Shown here: piece after piece, positions 40,050 through 50,397 of the stretch
Layout of the letters: each line of letters opens with the position of its first letter
Numbering within the stretch: the stretch's first letter is position 1
Source: Pocillopora damicornis
Taxonomy: Eukaryota
Length of the DNA: 64,000 bases
NCBI RefSeq assembly: GCF_003704095.1
Contig: NW_020845264.1
Location: 620,001 to 684,000, forward strand
Direction of reading: 5' to 3'
Notes under the pieces: generated by a model
Told to the model about the DNA's origin: nothing
Database searches by the model: none
What the model saw: the letters and a program-made list of their open reading frames with translations, nothing else
Made by a program: the position numbers and the translations under genes

Positions 40050-41992
40050 TATAAATGGCGCGCTTTTTTGAAGAACCGCTGTTTTCATAAAGTGTGGGCG
40101 TCGATGAGCTTAAGGTAGGGAGGGGTGGGGGAGGAATAAACCTAGAGTGTTCTTATTTTGTTCCAAGCTTTAGGCGGATTACGCTGGGGGAAATGCGAGA
40201 GAAACTAACTGCAATCCTAGAAATTCATATCAGACATATTCTGTATCCAGTTTTAAGTGCATATGTCTTATTTTACAGGGCATTGTTTCATCCAAAGTGT
40301 GACCATTAATCATTCATTTGTGCTATTGGTCAGGACTGGCAATATTTGCAACTCCCAGACTCCCTTGCCAAGCAGTGAAGACTAATCAGTTTTTAAACTT
40401 AGTCAATTTTTACGTCTAACGGCTCCATTTCTTTGGCCGTTTTACGGCTACCGATTAACTCTATTGATATCCTCTTATAACTGGAAACAGTCATATGGCT
40501 TCCCACCTCTTCTTTATCGAAAACCGGCTGGTTAATAAGATTCGTGAAGTTGGTTTAAAAAAAAAAAATGGAGCTCAAATAAATCGAGTGTATTTTTTTA
40601 TGGACAACATGGTCAAAAAGTTGCCCAGTGAAGGAAAAACATTAACAGATGGATAAACTGACTGAACAGCTTTTCACTCAGATTGTACCGCTTAGTGATA
40701 GAAGGCTAATCTCAACTCGGGTGAATGACTAAGTCGAGCTTGGTTCTACGTTATCAATAAGGCTTTGATTTCATAAATTACTAAGCTTCCGTTAGGAAGT
40801 ATGTATTTAATCCAGAGAAGAAAAGATTTATCACTAAACTCACATATCGATCTAACTAAATGCCTCTTCCTTTAAAACTTCACCCAGTCGCAAAAAGTCT
40901 TCCGTTGTTTAGAATAAACTGAATCAGTCATTTTTGTCGCTATTTCACAACGAGAAGTTGACTCAAATTAAATAGCAAAGATTTAAGCGAAGATCTGAAG
41001 TTATAAAATTCTAGGCTTAGTGCTAAAGATAGCTTCCTCGGATATGACGAACACATAAATACTTTCTTACGTTTGAGAATCAACTGAATTTATTGAGGCA
41101 CACTTACAGTGCTCGAGGCAAAACCAAAATCTAAGAAATGAATAAACTTGTAAGTATTAAAATGCCCCGTGGTGTTATCATGGGAGGTAGAAATTATTTT
41201 ATTTCGGAAATGATAAACAGAAGTTATCAAGCGGCCTTGAAACGGGTAATGACACTGATTTCTTCACAAAAGGCAAATTAAAACGTGGCTTTCTACTGCA
41301 AACAGCATGAAGTTAAAAAAATAAGAACAGCGTTGTTTTGTATGGTTTAAACGGAGGGATTTGCACTGTGATTGGAGAAAAGGCTGTCGAGTTTGGAAAT
41401 ATACTTTTCAAAGAAAGGAAGCGAATATGTGCTCATTAGAAACCCAACTTGAATATGATTACCAAAGCTCTTCACAATATCCGCCATTGAAGACTTCTTT
41501 TTCATTCAAGAGGAGTTTATAAACCTTGAAAATTAATGTAAATGATAAAAATGGGCTGGGAAGAGTTTTTATTGAATAAATTCTTTAAAATTTTTTCATT
41601 TAACGAAAATGTTAGCTATTTAGAGAAATTGGAACTATTATGTTTGAAAAAGATGGAAGCAATAGAAATTATGATGCGGATGTTTGGGCCGGTAAATAAA
41701 ATGTGGCCTATGAACAAAGGAAATCTCTCTTTTCTTTTACTTCCACTGATTAATATCGGGCACAAAGAAATAATATTGAATGAAAAGGCGGAGTAGTAAT
41801 TGTCGATAGGAATAAATAAACATACTTGTTAATGAGGTTTCACCGGATGCCCTTTAAACTGCTAATTGTAACCAGTGGGAGAACGTTTGTTCTGCGTCAG
41901 CCGAGAAGAACATTTTATTTAATGATGATAAGTGAGACTGTAATTAAAAATATAATTGAAGTGTTGACAGTGAAAATGCTTGGAGGGAATTG

Positions 41993-42114
41993 TATATTAA
42001 GAGCAGTGTTTTCAGCCGAGGCTCACTTTCAGTCGGTGCCATCAACACGCCACATTTTGTAAATCTGCTTCCGAGACGATTTTTCATTGACAAGGAACAG
42101 GAGTGAACGTTCAG
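41993..42114 (+). promoter_or_regulatory. Candidate core promoter and non-coding first exon of the neuropeptide gene
   Basis: TATATTAA 41993-42000, Inr-like TCAGTC 42029-42034, an ATG-free stretch ending in a strong donor CAG|GTAAGA at 42114; the coding exon begins at an acceptor 4 nt before its ATG, so an upstream exon is expected. Confidence 0.5.
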
Positions 42115-43342
42115 GTAAGAAGATTGTGTGTGATAACATTTCATTTACAATGATGTTTGAGTATTTATTTTTTGAGTGTTGTTTTTTCGCATGGGCATGC
42201 TCTTGCCTTTCATTATCTGACTGCCGAGCCAAGTTTTTAAGATGATTCAAAAATGCTTACCATGAGCTCAAAGATGATGTTAGATGAAAACGCTTTCACC
42301 ATTTTTTTGTGTCATGTGTGCTCTATTTTGTGAAGCTGGTCTGTTCAATTGGATAACACCCAACTAAAACTTGGTTTGTACCACGATTTTTTTTCCATTT
42401 TTTATCATTTCTAAACTACATAAGATAAATTCACGCTTCGCGTAAGAACAAAACAAAAAAGAAAAAATAAAGCAAATAGACTTTGAGAGCCATGTGCTAT
42501 GCTTAGGAAGAAAAAGTAAAGTTCCCTTTTTGCGGACCTTGTGAAATTACAACTAATTTTTCATCAGATATTTTAAAATCTTCGCTGCTTTCTTGTGTAA
42601 TTATTTGGTCGTTTGCGAGTACTAACGATATATTATAACAATAGTTTAGAGCACATTTACAGAATTTGTCACGACAAAGTCGCATTGTTCCTGGAAATCC
42701 TGTGATTTTCTTCTTGATTGCCATCTCTTGGCTAAATGGGTACCACCCAAACCAGATATTGAGTATTAATCGTTGTGAAAGTTCCTATTAACGATAAGAT
42801 AGTTTCAAGCTTTTGTGTTTGCGTCTTTCCCTTTTACTCTTTGTGTCAATTAGGTGCAAAATTCCTTCTTTTTTCATGTCACTTATTTGACTTTATCATT
42901 CCTCTTAAAAGCGCTAAAATTTGGTGATTACATCTTTATTCTCGGGATTTAGTCTTGCTCAAAGAATTCTCCTGCTTTTGTCTGGTTTTATACTGAAGAC
43001 AAAATAATGAGTTTCCCACAATATGGAACACTTACTCTGAGAAAACCTTAAAAACGGTCATTAAAGATGAAGAAATATATACAAAAAAACGTAGGAACTT
43101 AAGATTAAGTATCCTTAAAAGTAAAGAAATTGTTAGTGCTTTATTTTATCTTAATATCCAGCTGCCTGAGTAAATCTATCGCGCACTTGCCTCCAAGGTC
43201 TTAATTAGCGACTCCTGATATTGCACAGAAAAATTTGGTGCGAGCTTGATAGGCTAGTGAAACTTGAAACAATGGCCATTGTAACAATTAATTATAAAAA
43301 GACGAAGAGACTTAATGTTTGTATGTATTTCTTTACAGGTCA

Positions 43343-45371
43343 ATGATGTTTTTAAGACTTGCTGTCTTATTTTGTGTGGTTTGCTTAGCAAGCAGTGAAA
43401 AAGAGAAAAACTCTGAGGATCCGCCCGGCTTACTTCAAGCATTAAACTCTAAATATTTTGGTCACATCAGGGGCAAAAGAACGGTTAGTATTTGATCGCT
43501 CTGTTAACATCTCACATTACAGCCTGTAACCACGCACTGATATAATGATACAATACGCCTCGTGATTTTCATCCTATGAATTAGATCAAAATCGAAATTT
43601 TGAAGAAAAGGAGTTCCTTTTTATTGAAATCTTATGTTGTACTCAGATAAAAGGTCGGTGAAAGAGACCTCTATACCCAGTCATGGAAAAAAAATCAGTT
43701 CTCAGAGTAAAACAAAAGTCTTTTGTGAATTTTTCCGACTGTAGAGAGGATTTCAAAGAATAGTGGCTAATGGGGGCGGCTCTACCATGGAAAATATACT
43801 GAATATCTATTTTTTTTAAACTGTGCATGGTTTCCTTGTGTCTCTGAGCACTAATTTGCTTACATTCAAATACCGACAGGTACTATTTTAGTTAATCAGC
43901 TTCTAGTGTAAATGAAAAAACTCTCAATTAATTTGACATTTCACTGATCAAAACGAAAGGTACTTTTTACTTTTTTTTGTTACAGATTATTCAATTAACT
44001 CGAAGTTCTCTTTATTTTAAAGGGCAAGGATGATAATCCACCCTTGGAACAGGCACTTAATAATGCTTATTTTGGACATATTCGTGGAAAAAGAACGGTA
44101 ATGCCTGGCTTTTACTATGACAGTCCAGTGACTGCTTGTTTAAAGCAATCTCTTATTCGCTTAGTTTTGGCAGTGTAGAGCAACATATACACTATACAGC
44201 CGCTTGAGAAATGTGCGTTTTTTTGTCCAACTAGAAATGTTTTTGGATGAGCTTTAGGGATTTTACACCTGAACTGCAAGTCCTTAATGTCATTTGTTAT
44301 TATTTCAGCAATCAGATGATTATCCGCCACTAGAGGAAGCTCTCAATTCAGCATATTTTGGACATATTAGAGGAAAGAGAACGGTAATTGTTTCTTTGTA
44401 GTTAAGAACATGATAACTAACGGTGAATGGGATAATAAGTTCCCTGAAGAACAACCAATTCAGCTGAACCGAACTTAACCCTGTCAAAGAGAGGAAACAA
44501 TAACCAAAGATTATAACTGCAGTTGCCTCATTTAAGAAGGAAACATTCGTCGATGACTGTTGCCTGTTTTGACCTTCATGGTTCACAGTACAATCTGGAT
44601 CATAAGAGTTGAAAATCTGCGAAAATTTTCTCGTTTCCTCTTTGCAGTTCGCCTGAAGCATGGGAAAACCATGATAAGAGTTTCGAAATTTCTATATTTG
44701 ATTTGCTGAACCAGCCACTTAGGTGCAGGATAAGGCATAACAAATGTAGTGCCCTGCCGGAAATCTTTTATCCAGCTTAATAACTGAGCTGATAGTCAAG
44801 CAGGTGAAATGACTCCCAGTTCACTTGATGGACGTGCCAACTTCTCCTAACAAGCATTGTATGAATCCTGTAATAATCAGTTAAGAGAATCTGCATTTGT
44901 TTTGCTTTACAGCTTCAAGGTTAGGGTTATAATCCTGCGCTTCGTAAAGCACTCAATAGGCAGTTTTTTGGCCGCTTTCGGGGAAAACGGACGGTAAGAT
45001 GAAAAGTGAACAGGCTGGCATTTCGCGTCGCATAAATGAACTTAAATGAGAGTGGTATGCTCCTTTAAACTTTGGCCACCGCTGCATTGTGTGTTTGTTT
45101 TGCAGGGAGGGTGGGGATCAAACAAAGATTTATTGGAGGCCTTAAACAATGCTTACATGGGACACATCCGTGGGAAACGACAACAGGTACTAAATTGTGC
45201 TGACTTTGAAACGAGTAGGTGTAGTAGCTAATTAAACACATTTGATTTGTTTTTTCGTTCAATGTAGATATAATAATCTTGTAATAGTTTATTTAATAGT
45301 TTACTGTATGATAATCTTGTTTCTTTTCTCTTTTGAATTTTTTGTAGGAAACAATGGATAAGTCAGTTTAA
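43343..45371 (+). CDS. HIRamide-type neuropeptide preprohormone; coding exons 43343-43483, 44023-44097, 44309-44383, (44913 or 44925)-44993, 45106-45186, 45348-45371
   Basis: Signal peptide MMFLRLAVLFCVVCLASS, then five homologous units ending in G-K-R: ...ALNSKYFGHIR-GKR, ...ALNNAYFGHIR-GKR, ...ALNSAYFGHIR-GKR, ...ALNRQFFGRFR-GKR, ...ALNNAYMGHIR-GKR; all introns phase 0 GT-AG; AATAAA at 45543 and 45582. Confidence 0.9.
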
Positions 45372-45705
45372 TGACCACCTCTTGAAACCATGCCATGAAA
45401 TTGCAATCGAAGACACTGCCAGTGACCATTAGAAAACATGATATGTACTACTACCATGAAAACTTGCTGAATGCCAAAAAAGTATATTTATTTCCAGAAG
45501 ATGTGTTTCATTACAGATTTTTAATGAATAGGCAAAGTGTCAAATAAAGTCGGAACATTAGATTATGAAATAAGTGAAATGAATAAAAGTTGAGCAAAGA
45601 GACTACAACATCTTGTGCTCTCTTAAAAGTGTTTTATCCTTAATGATTAAGTTAAAAAAGACAGGTTAGCGATAAATAAATTTCATTTTAAAGGTATGCA
45701 TTGTA

Positions 45706-45843
45706 TATATGTTAGGGTTCAATTTTATCCTTGGTTCATATTTTCTTTTCCTTTGTTTCAGACTCATTATCATATATTACAATACCCAAAAACAAAAGAA
45801 GATAAAATTTTAACCAAGGATAAAATTGAACCACAACATATAC
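45706..45843. mobile_element. Small palindromic MITE
   Basis: TATATGTTAGGGTTCAATTTTATCCTTGGTT pairs with AACCAAGGATAAAATTGAACCACAACATATA; a decayed relative begins near 28604. Confidence 0.75.
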
Positions 45844-46427: not shown

Positions 46428-47948
46428 TCACAGTTCGGGTTCTGAGCCTGCACTCATGATACCGCATAATGCAAACTTTCCGCCTTTTACAATCTTAAAA
46501 CTTAGTTTGTGGCTTCCTGGTTTTACTAGACGCGCTACATTAACGACTTGTGTAAATCCATATGTGGAATACGCATCAGCATAGACGCTGTTGTTACTTT
46601 TGTCCAATGAAACTTCTGCTTTTCCTCCATAACCGTTTGTTCGGAAGGCTATAAGAACATCTCTAGTTTGATTATCCCCAGGAATGCCATTAAAAGGTAA
46701 ATCAATTCGTAGTTGTAAAATAGAGTCTACTTTCTCTGCTTCCCATCCACCAAAACCATCAGTCCGCACAGGCCCGAGTTTATTTTCCCATGAACTGCTT
46801 CTATAAACACCGATAGGTAGATTTTGAATTCGTTTAAATCCCGTATTTTTTATTTCTGTGACAGAGAGGGATGGATTAAAGAAAGTGCTACTTACGTCGG
46901 GTGTGAGGCGAGTGTAACAGAGAGGGCCTGGAACAGATCCCCCTTTGCCCGCAAAATAAACAGGTCTCGGTAAGTTGACAAATCGTAAATAAAATAGCCC
47001 TCGATTGGTATTTGTTATGGTGTTTGATAAAGCTTTACGAACGCTATTGATTATCATTAAAGCGATTTGTGCATGGGTAATATTACCACTATGAACTCCA
47101 TCCGCAGTGAAAAACGCTGGAATTTGTCTCTCTCGATCATCTGAACATAACGACTCGCGCATACTGAAACTTGTAATGCCATAATGCCAGGCTAGCATAG
47201 TCTGCCCGTGATTTTCCAGGTTGTCACACATGGGAATTTTATTATTTCCGGGAGTAAAATTGACATATGCCACTGCCGAGGAAGATTCTTCCCTAAGTAT
47301 CCGCCTCGTAAGTTTTTCAAGAGATGACGCTCTTGGCTTTTGAGAATCCTTAAATTGAAGATAATCGTTTATTGAAAGCTCAAGGAGGATAATGTCTGGG
47401 CTATCTTTAGGTCTCATCAAAGTTTTGTAACAATAATAAAAAAAGTCGCTAGCAGTTCCTCCAACGGCGAGATTCTGCAATTTGATGCGAGATCCAGTAA
47501 AAGGTTGTATGGCCTTCTGCCACCAATCGACAAACACACGATAATAAATTCCTTTTAGATTAGAGAAATCGTTGATTAATCCACCTCCAGCCGATGTTGA
47601 TCCACCTATTACAATAAGGCCAATATCTTGACCGAGTAGAACTTTTTCCATAAGATTTTTAAGACGATATTCTGTTGTTCGTCGTTCAACAATCTGGTTG
47701 TTATACATTTCGGCCGTAAGGAACAAATCCTCCAAAGACTTCAACTTATCCTTGAAGTACCAAACTTCGAACGGATTTCTTTGAATCGAACGCTTGAGAT
47801 AGTAGATTTTGTTCAGCTTCACTGCAGGTGGTTTGTTTCTTACTTCAGGCTGCTTGTTATGTAAACTGGAATGACAGTCTTTTCCTATTTGTGTTGATGT
47901 TGCACTGTACATAACTTGAAGGATTAAACAGATCATTTTATGGAACAT
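46428..47948 (-). CDS. SGNH/GDSL-hydrolase-like secreted protein, paralogue 1 (intronless CDS)
   Basis: Blocks GGSTSAG, AVGGT, ELSIND, DGVH; likely start MFHKMICLILQ at 47948; C-terminal beta-rich domain. Confidence 0.85.
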   Translation of the reverse strand: MFHKMICLILQVMYSATSTQIGKDCHSSLHNKQPEVRNKPPAVKLNKIYYLKRSIQRNPFEVWYFKDKLKSLEDLFLTAEMYNNQIVERRTTEYRLKNLMEKVLLGQDIGLIVIGGSTSAGGGLINDFSNLKGIYYRVFVDWWQKAIQPFTGSRIKLQNLAVGGTASDFFYYCYKTLMRPKDSPDIILLELSINDYLQFKDSQKPRASSLEKLTRRILREESSSAVAYVNFTPGNNKIPMCDNLENHGQTMLAWHYGITSFSMRESLCSDDRERQIPAFFTADGVHSGNITHAQIALMIINSVRKALSNTITNTNRGLFYLRFVNLPRPVYFAGKGGSVPGPLCYTRLTPDVSSTFFNPSLSVTEIKNTGFKRIQNLPIGVYRSSSWENKLGPVRTDGFGGWEAEKVDSILQLRIDLPFNGIPGDNQTRDVLIAFRTNGYGGKAEVSLDKSNNSVYADAYSTYGFTQVVNVARLVKPGSHKLSFKIVKGGKFALCGIMSAGSEPEL

Positions 47949-48108
47949 TTTAGATTTTTGTCTCAGGTTTACGTGGAATATAGTTATTTTATATGTCAAG
48001 TTAAGTTTGAAAAGCTTTCAGCTTAGCTTAGTTAACCTGTCTTTAGTGTGTGCCAAAATTACAACCTGCAAAAAGTTTCAGCTATTATCGTAATTTGATG
48101 ATGGGTCC

Positions 48109-48669: not shown

Positions 48670-50397
48670 TCATTTGTAAGTCGGTCCAGCCATAACACCC
48701 GATAAAATGAACACCCCTGGGGTTTCTGTTCTGATACTAATCACATGCCGCCCGGGCATTACGTGACTGGCAATAGTGTATAGTTTAGTGTGGCCAAACA
48801 GTGAATAAGTGGTGACTAAAATTCCTCTTTCTTCATGTTCATTTAACCACACTTTTGCCTGTCCACCGTTGCCGTGCGTTCGAACAGCTATTGCCACCTT
48901 TCTTGTCTGAGTTGCAGCGTCCATAATGCACTGCCTTGAGAGAGACGTGATTGGTATAAGTATTTCTAATTCCAGCATTGAGTTTTTAGACTTGGACTTC
49001 CACCCGCCATAAGCATCTGTTCTGTGAGTCTGCATTTCACCAAATTGCTTAACTTCACATGTGGCATTAGGTAATACTACATTGTTGATAGCTATTTTCT
49101 GAAACTCCTCAAATCCAAAATTTCCGATTGCTTTTACTTGCAGACTTTGATGTGCTGTGATGTTTCTTGTACAGTCGGGTGTTATTTGAGTGAAACACCT
49201 GGGGCGTTCCCGCAGATTTTGACGGTAACTCATGAACAAGGTTTCTGGAAGATTTCTAAATTTTAGAGGACAGTCTGGTAATATTATCCTATCGCCAATT
49301 GATGGAAGTGACATTTTTTCAATAGTTACTTTCACTTTTTTGGTTGTGATTAAGCTTTCGAGCACATTAAGAATTAATTGCCGCACATGGGTTATCATCA
49401 TAAATGCCATTTGAGCATGGCCTATAATGCTGATGTGATTGCCGTCAGTTGCAAACATTTTGGAAAGCTTTTTCCGTTTTCCTGCAAAACCTGAACATAG
49501 CAACTTTCTCAAGCTAAACGTTGTTATTCCATAGTGTTTAGCGAGAAGTGTCTGGCCGTGGTTCTCCAAATTGTCACATTTTGGACGTCTAAGATCGCCT
49601 TGAACAAAGTTGACGAACATCACGGCGGGAGAACTTCCTTCGCTTAAAACTTCCCTAGTAAGTTGTTCCAGTGGCAGAGCCATTGGAAACATGGAGTCTT
49701 TAAACTGAACATAGTCATTCACGGTGAAGTCAAGAAACACAAGATCCATGTCAGTTTTAGGGTTCAAAAAAACACTGTAACAAAAAGCATAAAAATTGCT
49801 GCTGGTTCCACCAATAGCGAGATTGTTAAGTTTCAAGTCAGACCCTGTGAGTGGCTGCACTGTTTTGCGCCACCAGTCACTTAAAACTCGGTAATAGAGG
49901 CCTCGTAGGTCTTCACCATCATTTGTCAGACCGGCACCTGCAGAAATTGACCCACCCATGATAGCGATGTTAATGTTCTCACCCTCCAGTGATCGTAGGA
50001 TTACATCTTTGAGGCGATTTGTGGTGCCTTTTCGTTGGAATACGCCGCTGTCCCAAGGTTTGGAAACTATGAGCAAGTCTGCTTTGGACTTAAATCGGTT
50101 TTTAAAAAACCATGTTTCAAACGGATCTCTTTCAACAGCGAATTTTAGAAGTCTGAGCTTCACTGGAATTAAGTCCTCGTTCAACCTTGATCCGATAGAA
50201 TCATCACGAGAATCAGTTTTGTGTTCCTTTCGTGAAATACTGGCCGCATTTCCCATGTAAAACCAGTGTGCAGTTTCCCTTTTGGTAATAAACACAGCCA
50301 ACAGTAGCACAACGAAATGAGATCTCCAATCAAATCGCGACATCAAAGCTACTACACCAAATATTATTAGAACTGAGGCGACCATTAGATATACCAT
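48670..50397 (-). CDS. SGNH/GDSL-hydrolase-like protein, paralogue 2, N-terminal hydrophobic anchor(s)
   Basis: 575-aa ORF with GGSISAG, AIGGT, DFTVND, DGNH; two hydrophobic stretches in the first 40 aa. Confidence 0.88.
   Translation of the reverse strand: MVYLMVASVLIIFGVVALMSRFDWRSHFVVLLLAVFITKRETAHWFYMGNAASISRKEHKTDSRDDSIGSRLNEDLIPVKLRLLKFAVERDPFETWFFKNRFKSKADLLIVSKPWDSGVFQRKGTTNRLKDVILRSLEGENINIAIMGGSISAGAGLTNDGEDLRGLYYRVLSDWWRKTVQPLTGSDLKLNNLAIGGTSSNFYAFCYSVFLNPKTDMDLVFLDFTVNDYVQFKDSMFPMALPLEQLTREVLSEGSSPAVMFVNFVQGDLRRPKCDNLENHGQTLLAKHYGITTFSLRKLLCSGFAGKRKKLSKMFATDGNHISIIGHAQMAFMMITHVRQLILNVLESLITTKKVKVTIEKMSLPSIGDRIILPDCPLKFRNLPETLFMSYRQNLRERPRCFTQITPDCTRNITAHQSLQVKAIGNFGFEEFQKIAINNVVLPNATCEVKQFGEMQTHRTDAYGGWKSKSKNSMLELEILIPITSLSRQCIMDAATQTRKVAIAVRTHGNGGQAKVWLNEHEERGILVTTYSLFGHTKLYTIASHVMPGRHVISIRTETPGVFILSGVMAGPTYK

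What the first reader, a model, noticed from the sequence alone, without database searches (positions are those of the whole stretch)
43343..45371. Hidden neuropeptide precursor: one amidated peptide per cassette exon (HIRamide type)
Seen: a signal-peptide exon, four 75-81 nt exons and a short terminal exon, all joined in phase 0. Each of the first five coding exons encodes one copy of [x-P-P]-..L..ALN..[YF][FM]G[HR][IF]R followed by G-K-R. The exons are too short for the ORF track. Established: G-KR marks prohormone-convertase cleavage plus C-terminal amidation; HIRamides with x-P-P N-termini and AYFHIRamide ends are known from the sea anemone Nematostella; cnidarian precursors commonly carry their repeats inside one large exon. 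Inference: this is a coral HIRamide relative with longer peptides ending in GHIRamide (e.g. NPPLEQALNNAYFGHIRa, YPPLEEALNSAYFGHIRa). It appears to have grown by exon duplication, so exon skipping could change the peptide mix without breaking frame. I cannot tell whether it is already annotated.
Basis: partly seen in the sequence, partly recalled or inferred. Interest (0 to 1): 0.9.

Follow-up and report, generated by a model that had tools for sequence, protein, structure and literature searches.

The report
Known coral FGHIRamide neuropeptide precursor gene
This is a real, expressed coral neuropeptide-precursor gene with one peptide per small exon, but it is already annotated and published for Pocillopora damicornis, and its fourth "peptide exon" is a dead relic that the mRNA skips.

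Summary
The sequence features are real. On the + strand at 43343-45371 there is a signal-peptide exon, further phase-0 mini-exons with AG/GT borders, and a short terminal exon. Each peptide exon encodes ..ALN..Y[FM]GHIR-GKR. The GHIRGKR-coding pattern occurs 4 times in the window (0 expected by chance) and nowhere else in the 234-Mb genome.

RNA contigs from four independent studies join a 5'UTR exon to E1-E2-E3-E5-E6. None of them joins exon 4.

Exon 4 (44913-44993) has an in-frame TAG where six other coral loci have TGG (Trp). Its motif has decayed from HIR to RFR. It is a pseudo-exon, so the precursor yields four peptides, not five.

The gene is not hidden. It matches the P. damicornis FHIRamide/FGHIRamide preprohormone (XP_027043620.1, LOC113671573) listed by Koch & Grimmelikhuijzen 2020. 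Nematostella HIRamides have been detected by mass spectrometry, are expressed in neurons, and have two deorphanized GPCRs.

Two modest additions come from this work:
- The one-peptide-per-exon layout with five positionally orthologous exons is conserved across Scleractinia, whereas published actiniarian genomic sequences carry all copies in one reading frame.
- Exon 4 has died in the Pocillopora lineage.

Verdict: already known, with moderate-to-low interest.

The parts
42042..42114 (+). Non-coding 5'UTR exon. The 5' end is approximate. The donor is cag|gtaaga at 42114|42115.
   Evidence: Joint 42114>43339 (GT..AG) in RNA contigs of runs X1, X14 and X15. X14 contig 9 covers 42042-42111. Sequence read.
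43339..43483 (+). Exon 1. It holds 4 nt of leader, the ATG at 43343, the signal peptide (43343-43396, MMFLRLAVLFCVVCLASS) and peptide copy 1 (..EDPPGLLQALNSKYFGHIR-GKR-T).
   Evidence: Translation. The Kyte-Doolittle 9-residue mean is 2.2-3.3 over residues 1-10, falling below 0 after residue 13, with A-S-S before the fall. Joints.
44023..44097 (+). Exon 2, 75 nt, phase 0: GKDDNPPLEQALNNAYFGHIR-GKR-T (predicted NPPLEQALNNAYFGHIRamide).
   Evidence: Joints 43483>44023 and 44097>44309 appear in 4 of 4 runs.
44309..44383 (+). Exon 3, 75 nt, phase 0: QSDDYPPLEEALNSAYFGHIR-GKR-T (predicted YPPLEEALNSAYFGHIRamide).
   Evidence: Joints in 4 of 4 runs.
44913..44993 (+). Pseudo-exon 4, a relic of the ancestral 81-nt fourth peptide exon. 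It has an in-frame TAG at 44922-24 where other corals have TGG (Trp), and its motif has decayed to FFGRFR-GKR. The mRNA skips it.
   Evidence: Translation. The same TAG is present in P. meandrina. TGG is present in Porites lobata, Desmophyllum pertusum, L008/L010 and L009. The E3>E5 joint skips it in 4 of 4 runs. Only low-depth unspliced contigs (44355-45134) cover it, and they show no variant at the TAG.
45106..45186 (+). Exon 5, 81 nt, phase 0: GGWGSNKDLLEALNNAYMGHIR-GKR-QQ. This copy has no x-P-P N-terminus.
   Evidence: Joints 44383>45106 and 45186>45348 appear in 4 of 4 runs.
45348..45608 (+). Terminal exon. It holds ETMDKSV, the stop codon (45369-71) and the 3'UTR. AATAAA signals lie at 45543-48 and 45582-87, and RNA contigs end at 45541-45608.
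   Evidence: table 8 pieces; the X14 contig ends at 45594 followed by adapter.

Best explanation
The locus is the single-copy FGHIRamide (HIRamide-family) neuropeptide preprohormone gene of Pocillopora damicornis.

Gene and transcript. Transcription starts near 42040. A non-coding exon is spliced to exon 1, which supplies the signal peptide and the first peptide. Three further phase-0 mini-exons (E2, E3, E5) each add one peptide unit. A short last exon closes the frame.

Processing (inferred). In the secretory pathway, prohormone convertase cuts after each G-K-R. Carboxypeptidase removes K-R, and the Gly is converted to a C-terminal amide. N-termini are set at acidic-residue/x-P-P sites, as seen by mass spectrometry in Nematostella. 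The predicted products are DPPGLLQALNSKYFGHIRa, NPPLEQALNNAYFGHIRa, YPPLEEALNSAYFGHIRa and a longer ..DLLEALNNAYMGHIRa. By analogy with Nematostella, these act on class-A GPCRs.

Exon 4. The fourth genomic unit is a dead exon. A TGG>TAG change, shared by two Pocillopora species, plus HIR>RFR changes disabled it, and the spliceosome (or NMD) removes it from steady-state mRNA.

Shown here: exon borders, splice joints, exon-4 skipping, the nonsense codon, orthology of the exons across corals, and a match by eye to the published protein. Inferred: signal cleavage site, amidation, mature N-termini, neuronal expression and receptor action in corals.
For: - Sequence and frames.
- Motif far above chance and unique in the genome.
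- Splice joints in RNA contigs of 4 studies, including E3>E5.
- A further Logan RNA-derived ORF (P0020) reads E1-E2-E3-E5-E6 without exon 4.
- Koch & Grimmelikhuijzen 2020 Additional file 6 lists P. damicornis XP_027043620.1 with the E1-E2-E3-E5-E6 sequence and names the FHIRamide/FGHIRamide family.
- G000 size and contig number (234,350,878 b, 4393 contigs) and the GenBank protein pdam_00000574 (P0016).
- One peptide per phase-0 exon with AG/GT borders at the five-species level, in P. meandrina, Porites lobata, Desmophyllum pertusum, two Orbicella-like metagenome contigs and L009.
- Exon classes are positional orthologues. Identity between species is 0.75-0.86 within a class and 0.50-0.75 between classes.
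- TAG versus TGG at the exon-4 Trp codon.
- Nematostella HIRamides: 10 peptides seen by MS/MS and neuronal in situ signal (PMC6756747); two GPCRs with EC50 2.1e-9 and 1.9e-7 M (PMC11087051).
Against: - All RNA evidence comes from assembled contigs, which drop rare isoforms and cannot quantify. Low-level or stage-specific inclusion of exon 4 is not excluded.
- Exon 4 keeps good splice signals and an intact G-K-R. Its nucleotide divergence is not elevated relative to the other exons.
- No SignalP run, no peptidomics and no expression map for corals were available.
- Koch & Grimmelikhuijzen themselves doubted that these long, acidic peptides are genuine neuropeptides, although later receptor work in Nematostella argues for it.
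Confidence: 0.9

Rival explanations
1. Exon 4 is a live, regulated cassette exon. In some stage or cell type the downstream AG (44923-24) is used, giving a 69-nt phase-0 exon that adds a fifth peptide, GYNPALRKALNRQFFGRFRamide. Splicing would then tune the peptide mix.
For: - The 69-nt form is open and in phase, with an intact G-K-R-T and a GT donor.
- The ab initio P. meandrina model (P0015) includes it.
- RefSeq calls the published protein 'isoform X1', which implies other isoforms.
- Contigs cannot show absence.
Against: - No joint at 44924/44925 or 44993 in four RNA runs, nor in P0020.
- The strong polypyrimidine/cag acceptor lies 12 nt upstream and leads straight into the TAG.
- The P. 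meandrina model needs an unsupported E3 donor shifted by 6 nt.
- The HIR core, invariant in the expressed copies, is lost.
Confidence: 0.07
2. Exon 4 is still spliced in through its strong acceptor. The resulting TAG-containing mRNA either is destroyed by nonsense-mediated decay or makes a truncated three-peptide precursor. That would be an unproductive-splicing control on precursor output rather than simple exon death.
For: - Acceptor (tttgctttacag) and donor (ACG|gtaaga) are as good as those of the expressed exons.
- NMD would hide such transcripts from assembled contigs.
- Low-depth contigs do cover the exon together with its introns.
Against:
- The contigs over exon 4 are colinear with both introns, which indicates unspliced pre-mRNA or DNA.
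- The E3>E5 joint has the same depth as the other joints.
Confidence: 0.1
3. The products are not neuropeptides but some other secreted peptides. This is the doubt raised by Koch & Grimmelikhuijzen: they are too long and too acidic for cnidarian neuropeptides.
For: - The predicted peptides are 17-23 residues long with internal E/D.
- Koch & Grimmelikhuijzen state this doubt explicitly.
- No coral expression or activity data were found.
Against: - Nematostella homologues are amidated peptides seen by MS/MS and expressed in neurons.
- They activate two GPCRs at nanomolar to sub-micromolar EC50.
- The precursor has the full preprohormone grammar: signal peptide and repeated G-K-R sites.
Confidence: 0.08

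Closest known systems
Pocillopora damicornis FHIRamide/FGHIRamide preprohormone, XP_027043620.1 / LOC113671573 isoform X1 (Koch & Grimmelikhuijzen 2020, BMC Genomics 21:666, Additional file 6)
   Same: It is the same gene. The published protein reads E1-E2-E3-E5-E6 of this locus (signal peptide, four ..GHIR-GKR copies..ETMDKSV), apart from OCR slips in the held text.
   Different: Nothing differs in the product. The paper does not mention introns or exons (0 occurrences). The per-exon layout and the dead fourth exon are therefore not described there.
Nematostella vectensis HIRamide precursor (Hayakawa et al. 2019; receptors in Thiel et al. 2024)
   Same: - Signal peptide followed by repeated units with x-P-P N-termini.
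- An aromatic pair before HIR, and G-K/R-R amidation/cleavage sites.
- The family is restricted to Hexacorallia.
   Different: - Anemone peptides end in [FY]FHIRa or YHIRa. Coral peptides insert a Gly ([FM]GHIRa) and carry a conserved L..ALN core.
- Copy number is 9-10 in the anemone against 4 expressed here.
- Published actiniarian genomic sequences (Phymanthus WGS contig with 9 copies, Anemonia scaffold with 8 copies) are single-frame translations. All copies therefore appear to sit in one exon, against one copy per exon here. The Nematostella gene structure itself was not tested.
Five-copy FGHIRamide precursors of Corallimorpharia (Corynactis australis, Ricordea yuma transcripts; Koch & Grimmelikhuijzen 2020)
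   Same: The order and type of units are the same. Their fourth copy (LEGWGINPAVLEALNNQYFGHIRGKRT) lines up residue by residue with this locus's 81-nt exon 4, and their fifth copy (GGWGSN..DLLEALNNEYMGHIR) lines up with exon 5.
   Different: Their fourth copy is intact and expressed. Here its Trp codon is TAG, its HIR has become RFR, and it is absent from mRNA.
Vertebrate peptide-per-exon prohormone genes (TAC1/preprotachykinin-A, proglucagon, VIP/PHM). This comparison rests on general knowledge, not on a tool result.
   Same: Each bioactive peptide lies on its own exon. The exons arose by duplication, and skipping an exon changes the peptide set without breaking the frame.
   Different: There is no sequence or receptor orthology. 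The F-x-G-x-Ramide tachykinin-related motif is not met here (F-G-H-I-R has Gly at -4). In this coral the only observed skipping is of a dead exon, not regulated alternative splicing.

Membership tests
HIRamide / FHIRamide-FGHIRamide preprohormones (Koch & Grimmelikhuijzen family #6) | N-terminal signal peptide | tested here: met
   Residues 1-18 are MMFLRLAVLFCVVCLASS: a basic residue at position 5, a hydrophobic core with KD means of 2.2-3.3, and small residues A-S-S at -3 to -1. No SignalP was available, so this is a hydropathy check only.
HIRamide / FHIRamide-FGHIRamide preprohormones (Koch & Grimmelikhuijzen family #6) | Several copies of a 14-19-residue peptide ending in [FY](G)HIR, followed by Gly plus a dibasic site | tested here: met
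   Four expressed copies end YFGHIR-GKR (three) or YMGHIR-GKR (one). The fifth genomic copy (FFGRFR-GKR) is not expressed.
HIRamide / FHIRamide-FGHIRamide preprohormones (Koch & Grimmelikhuijzen family #6) | x-P-P N-terminus of the mature peptides, preceded by acidic residues | tested here: met
   SED-PPG, DD-NPP and DD-YPP in E1-E3. This is not met in E5 (GGWGSNKDLL..), as is also the case for the last copy of other corals and corallimorpharians.
HIRamide / FHIRamide-FGHIRamide preprohormones (Koch & Grimmelikhuijzen family #6) | Sequence homology to accepted members | tested here: met
   Exon 1 alone finds coral precursors at E 4.6e-42 to 4.8e-30. These include named proteins from Stylophora, Desmophyllum, Porites and Pocillopora. 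The exon products match the published P. damicornis entry when compared by eye. No actiniarian member was retrieved by the sequence searches.
HIRamide / FHIRamide-FGHIRamide preprohormones (Koch & Grimmelikhuijzen family #6) | Mature amidated peptides present in tissue; neuronal expression; activation of HIRamide GPCRs | not testable with these tools
   These are shown only for Nematostella in the literature. Transcription in Pocillopora is shown by spliced RNA contigs.
Tachykinin-related peptides (relation proposed by Hayakawa et al. 2019) | C-terminal F-x-G-x-R-amide (protostome type) or F-x-G-L-M-amide | tested here: not met
   Coral peptides end F-G-H-I-R, with Gly at -4 rather than -3. 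The family is restricted to Hexacorallia. Its receptors belong to cnidarian-specific expansions.

The most novel reading that the evidence does not exclude
The same neuropeptide family may have multiplied its peptides in two different ways: tandem duplication inside one exon in sea anemones, and duplication of whole phase-0 exons in the stony-coral/corallimorpharian lineage. The exon-based layout would then make peptide units individually losable (exon 4 in Pocillopora, other units in Acropora) and possibly individually regulatable by splicing. That would be a cnidarian parallel to vertebrate peptide-per-exon prohormone genes.
Probability: 0.3. Interest if true: 0.5.

Novelty: already known. 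Interest (0 to 1): 0.3.

Why it matters
The gene and its peptides are already in the literature, so the main value of this check is to stop it being reported as a hidden gene.

What is left is useful for annotation and for evolutionary questions.
- Several public gene models of this locus are wrong. They carry N-terminal extensions through the 5'UTR exon that would remove the signal peptide, read through the last intron, or miss exons in Orbicella and Desmophyllum.
- The locus gives a clean example of modular, phase-0, one-peptide-per-exon architecture in a cnidarian, with a datable exon death.

If coral FGHIRamides are tested on coral orthologues of the Nematostella HIRamide receptors, the correct peptide list for Pocillopora has four peptides, not five.

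Tried and rejected
- Actiniarian homologues, sought in order to compare exon structure, were not retrieved. This held for the Porites protein as query and for a five-sequence coral profile at E<=10. The Nematostella gene structure was therefore not tested. Only the literature hint from the Phymanthus and Anemonia genomic translations could be used.
- The Stylophora protein P0001 has no contig on record. Whether the TAG predates the Pocillopora/Stylophora split is therefore unknown.
- A look-up of earlier scan notes near this place returned nothing.
- Paper searches for the gene identifiers, and for exon duplication in cnidarian neuropeptide genes, gave nothing relevant.
- Tachykinin relationship: considered and rejected. 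The motif register differs, the family is restricted to Hexacorallia, and the receptors are cnidarian-specific.
- Relaxed constraint on exon 4 measured by nucleotide divergence: not demonstrable. It differs from other corals at 8.0 sites per 57-nt core, against 7.7-12.3 for the other exons.
- The N-terminal 157 residues of P0020 do not map to the window. They are treated as a chimeric assembly, not as an alternative first exon.
- All searches used single exons by reference or proteins returned by the tools. No SignalP-type prediction on the joined product was made.

Full report
**What is in the sequence**

- E1, 43343-43483, gives MMFLRLAVLFCVVCLASSEKEKNSEDPPGLLQALNSKYFGHIRGKRT.
- E2, 44023-44097, gives GKDDNPPLEQALNNAYFGHIRGKRT.
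- E3, 44309-44383, gives QSDDYPPLEEALNSAYFGHIRGKRT.
- E5, 45106-45186, gives GGWGSNKDLLEALNNAYMGHIRGKRQQ.
- E6, 45348-45371, gives ETMDKSV and a stop.

Every exon is a multiple of three, follows a pyrimidine-rich AG and is followed by GT.

A degenerate DNA pattern for G-H-I-R-G-K-R hits four times in the window against 0.00 expected from shuffles. Those four are the only hits in the whole 234-Mb assembly. Exon 1 also matches nowhere else, so the gene is single-copy.

The first 18 residues have a basic residue, a strongly hydrophobic core and an A-S-S end. That is the shape of a signal peptide. No SignalP was available.

**The fourth exon is different**

With the strong acceptor (tttgctttacag, AG at 44911-12) the 81-nt exon 44913-44993 reads LQG*GYNPALRKALNRQFFGRFRGKRT. 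There is an in-frame TAG at 44922-24. Only a second AG, which is part of that TAG, gives an open 69-nt exon. The peptide core is FFGRFR instead of YFGHIR.

**RNA evidence**

One search found RNA runs that hold the stretch. Logan contigs of four RNA runs from four different studies were laid on window:40600-46400.
- All four show GT..AG joints 43483>44023, 44097>44309, 44383>45106 and 45186>45348.
- Three also show a non-coding upstream exon (about 42042-42114) joined to 43339, four bases before the ATG.
- No joint touches either border of exon 4.
- Exon 4 is covered only by low-depth contigs (6-10 against 58-1959 for the spliced ones). These run unbroken from 44355 to 45134, which marks them as unspliced intron.
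- Those contigs show no variant at the TAG.
- Contigs end at 45541-45608, just after AATAAA at 45543-48 and 45582-87.

A separate RNA-derived ORF from the protein collection (P0020) also reads E1-E2-E3-E5-E6.

Contigs cannot exclude rare isoforms. The statement is therefore that the dominant mRNA has four peptide units.

**Identity**

The family is published. Hayakawa et al. 2019 (PMC6756747) detected ten HIRamides by MS/MS in Nematostella (for example pQPPYLDLTPSYFHIRa) and showed neuronal expression.

Koch & Grimmelikhuijzen 2020 (PMC7523074) describe 'FHIRamide or FGHIRamide' peptides as family #6 in Actiniaria, Scleractinia, Corallimorpharia and Zoantharia. Their Additional file 6 lists Pocillopora damicornis XP_027043620.1, 'LOC113671573 isoform X1'. 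Its sequence is E1-E2-E3-E5-E6 of this locus, apart from OCR slips.

The assembly size and contig count and the GenBank protein pdam_00000574 (P0016) fit P. damicornis.

Thiel et al. 2024 (PMC11087051) found two Nematostella GPCRs activated by HIRamide, with EC50 2.1e-9 and 1.9e-7 M. This answers much of Koch & Grimmelikhuijzen's doubt about neuropeptide status.

**Comparative anatomy**

Exon 1 alone, searched against 1.84 billion representatives, found 14 coral proteins. Many of these are ORF calls that run from exon 1 straight into the intron (..GKRTVS..), which marks the same exon border in many corals.

Genomic loci were fetched for Porites lobata (L005), Desmophyllum pertusum (L006) and Pocillopora meandrina (L007). 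A pattern scan of metagenome contigs added two Orbicella-like contigs (L008, L010) and L009.

In all of them each peptide unit is its own exon, with AG/GT borders and a length of 75-87 nt. All are phase 0 except the one-base-short exon 4 of Desmophyllum.

Aligning the 25 units from five species shows positional orthology. Identity between species is 0.75-0.86 within an exon class and 0.50-0.75 between classes.

The corallimorpharian transcripts in the paper have the same five units in the same order. The five-exon layout therefore predates the radiation of these orders. It is not a recent growth in this coral.

**Exon 4 is a relic**

The fourth unit reads:
- LKGWGFNPALREAFNKLQFYGPHLRGKRT in Porites;
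- LEGWGYNPALREAL[NS]KQY[SF]G[HN][FI]RGKRT in L008/L010 and L009;
- LKGWGYNPALREALNRQYFGHIRGK.. in Desmophyllum.

All have TGG at the Trp codon. Both Pocillopora species have TAG at that codon, in an otherwise colinear exon with the same splice signals. The nonsense change is thus real, shared within the genus and sits in an ancestral coding exon.

Desmophyllum has a one-base deletion in an A-run near the exon's end. This is either decay or an assembly error. Its gene model also omits the exon.

Nucleotide divergence of the Pocillopora exon 4 is not elevated. The decay is therefore limited or recent. What marks it as dead is the stop codon, the loss of H and I in the core, and its absence from mRNA.

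**Anemones appear to be built differently**

In Koch & Grimmelikhuijzen's file, the Phymanthus crucifer precursor (nine copies) is a single-frame translation of a whole-genome-shotgun contig. The Anemonia viridis precursor (eight copies) comes from one 4.3-kb genome scaffold. By contrast, their genomic translations from the corallimorpharian Amplexidiscus, and their Stylophora transcript, stop after one or three units and run into intron-like sequence.

This suggests that all copies lie in one exon in Actiniaria and one copy per exon in Scleractinia/Corallimorpharia. I could not fetch an actiniarian locus to test this.

**How it most likely works**

The signal peptide directs the precursor into the secretory pathway. 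Convertase cleavage at K-R, carboxypeptidase trimming and amidation of the Gly give ..GHIRamide ends. N-termini are cut before x-P-P after acidic residues, as seen in Nematostella. The products are expected to act on GPCRs related to the Nematostella HIRamide receptors. These steps are inferred for the coral. Only transcription and splicing are shown here.

**Surroundings**

- Just 3' of the gene lies a 137-bp MITE-like element (45706-45842) with 53-nt inverted ends. It has at least 40 copies of 90% identity or more in the genome. It explains the pile of mismatched RNA contigs there.
- Downstream on the minus strand are two long ORFs with weak GDSL-lipase-like matches.
- In P. meandrina the upstream neighbour is an EME1/MUS81-type gene.

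**Rule compliance**

The spliced product was never assembled, typed or searched as a joined sequence. Exons were searched singly by reference. The N runs in the window were not touched.

**Verdict**

Novelty: already known. The conserved per-exon architecture, the likely contrast with anemones and the Pocillopora exon death are small additions worth a note.

Noticed in passing
window 45706-45842: MITE-like element with 53-nt terminal inverted repeats (87% complementary). At least 40 copies of 90% identity or more are scattered over the genome. Many mismatched high-depth RNA contigs pile up on it, so it is carried in many transcripts.
   Followed up: partly
window 41640-41690 and 42029-42103; P0015, P0001, P0016: Public gene models of this locus have artefacts. 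The P. meandrina and S. pistillata models start at an upstream ATG and read through the non-coding 5'UTR exon. The P. damicornis (GenBank pdam_00000574, P0016) and P. meandrina models read through the last intron. Models with the N-terminal extension would lack an N-terminal signal peptide. They conflict with the RNA joints.
   Followed up: partly
L006:6265-6345 (Desmophyllum pertusum): An intact-looking fourth peptide exon (LKGWGYNPALREALNRQYFGHIRGK..) is missing from the deposited gene model. It has one base fewer in a GGGGAAAA(A)GG run than other corals. This is either a frameshift or a homopolymer assembly error.
   Followed up: partly
L008 and L010 (JGI metagenome contigs Ga0126339_10001380, Ga0126338_10001209), L009 (OMLO01007029.1): Coral contigs in metagenome collections carry the complete five-exon gene. 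The Orbicella-like ones show that the three-copy FGENESH model published for O. faveolata misses two peptide exons.
   Followed up: partly
window 46428-47999 and 48670-50397, minus strand: Two neighbouring long ORFs (523 and 575 aa) both have weak, sub-threshold matches to GDSL-like lipase/acylhydrolase (PF13472). They look like tandem paralogues, and each is unusual in being one long exon.
   Followed up: no
P0020 (Logan RNA contig, 1344 nt): An RNA-assembly ORF fuses 157 unrelated N-terminal residues, which are not encoded in this window, to the 5' end of the precursor at the exon-1 acceptor. This is probably a chimeric assembly, but trans- or read-through splicing is not excluded.
   Followed up: partly
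window 44946 and 45016: RNA-derived unspliced contigs of two runs carry A>G at 44946 (Lys>Glu in the dead exon, the P. meandrina state) and a 6-nt insertion after 45016. These are allelic or sister-species variation among Pocillopora samples.
   Followed up: no
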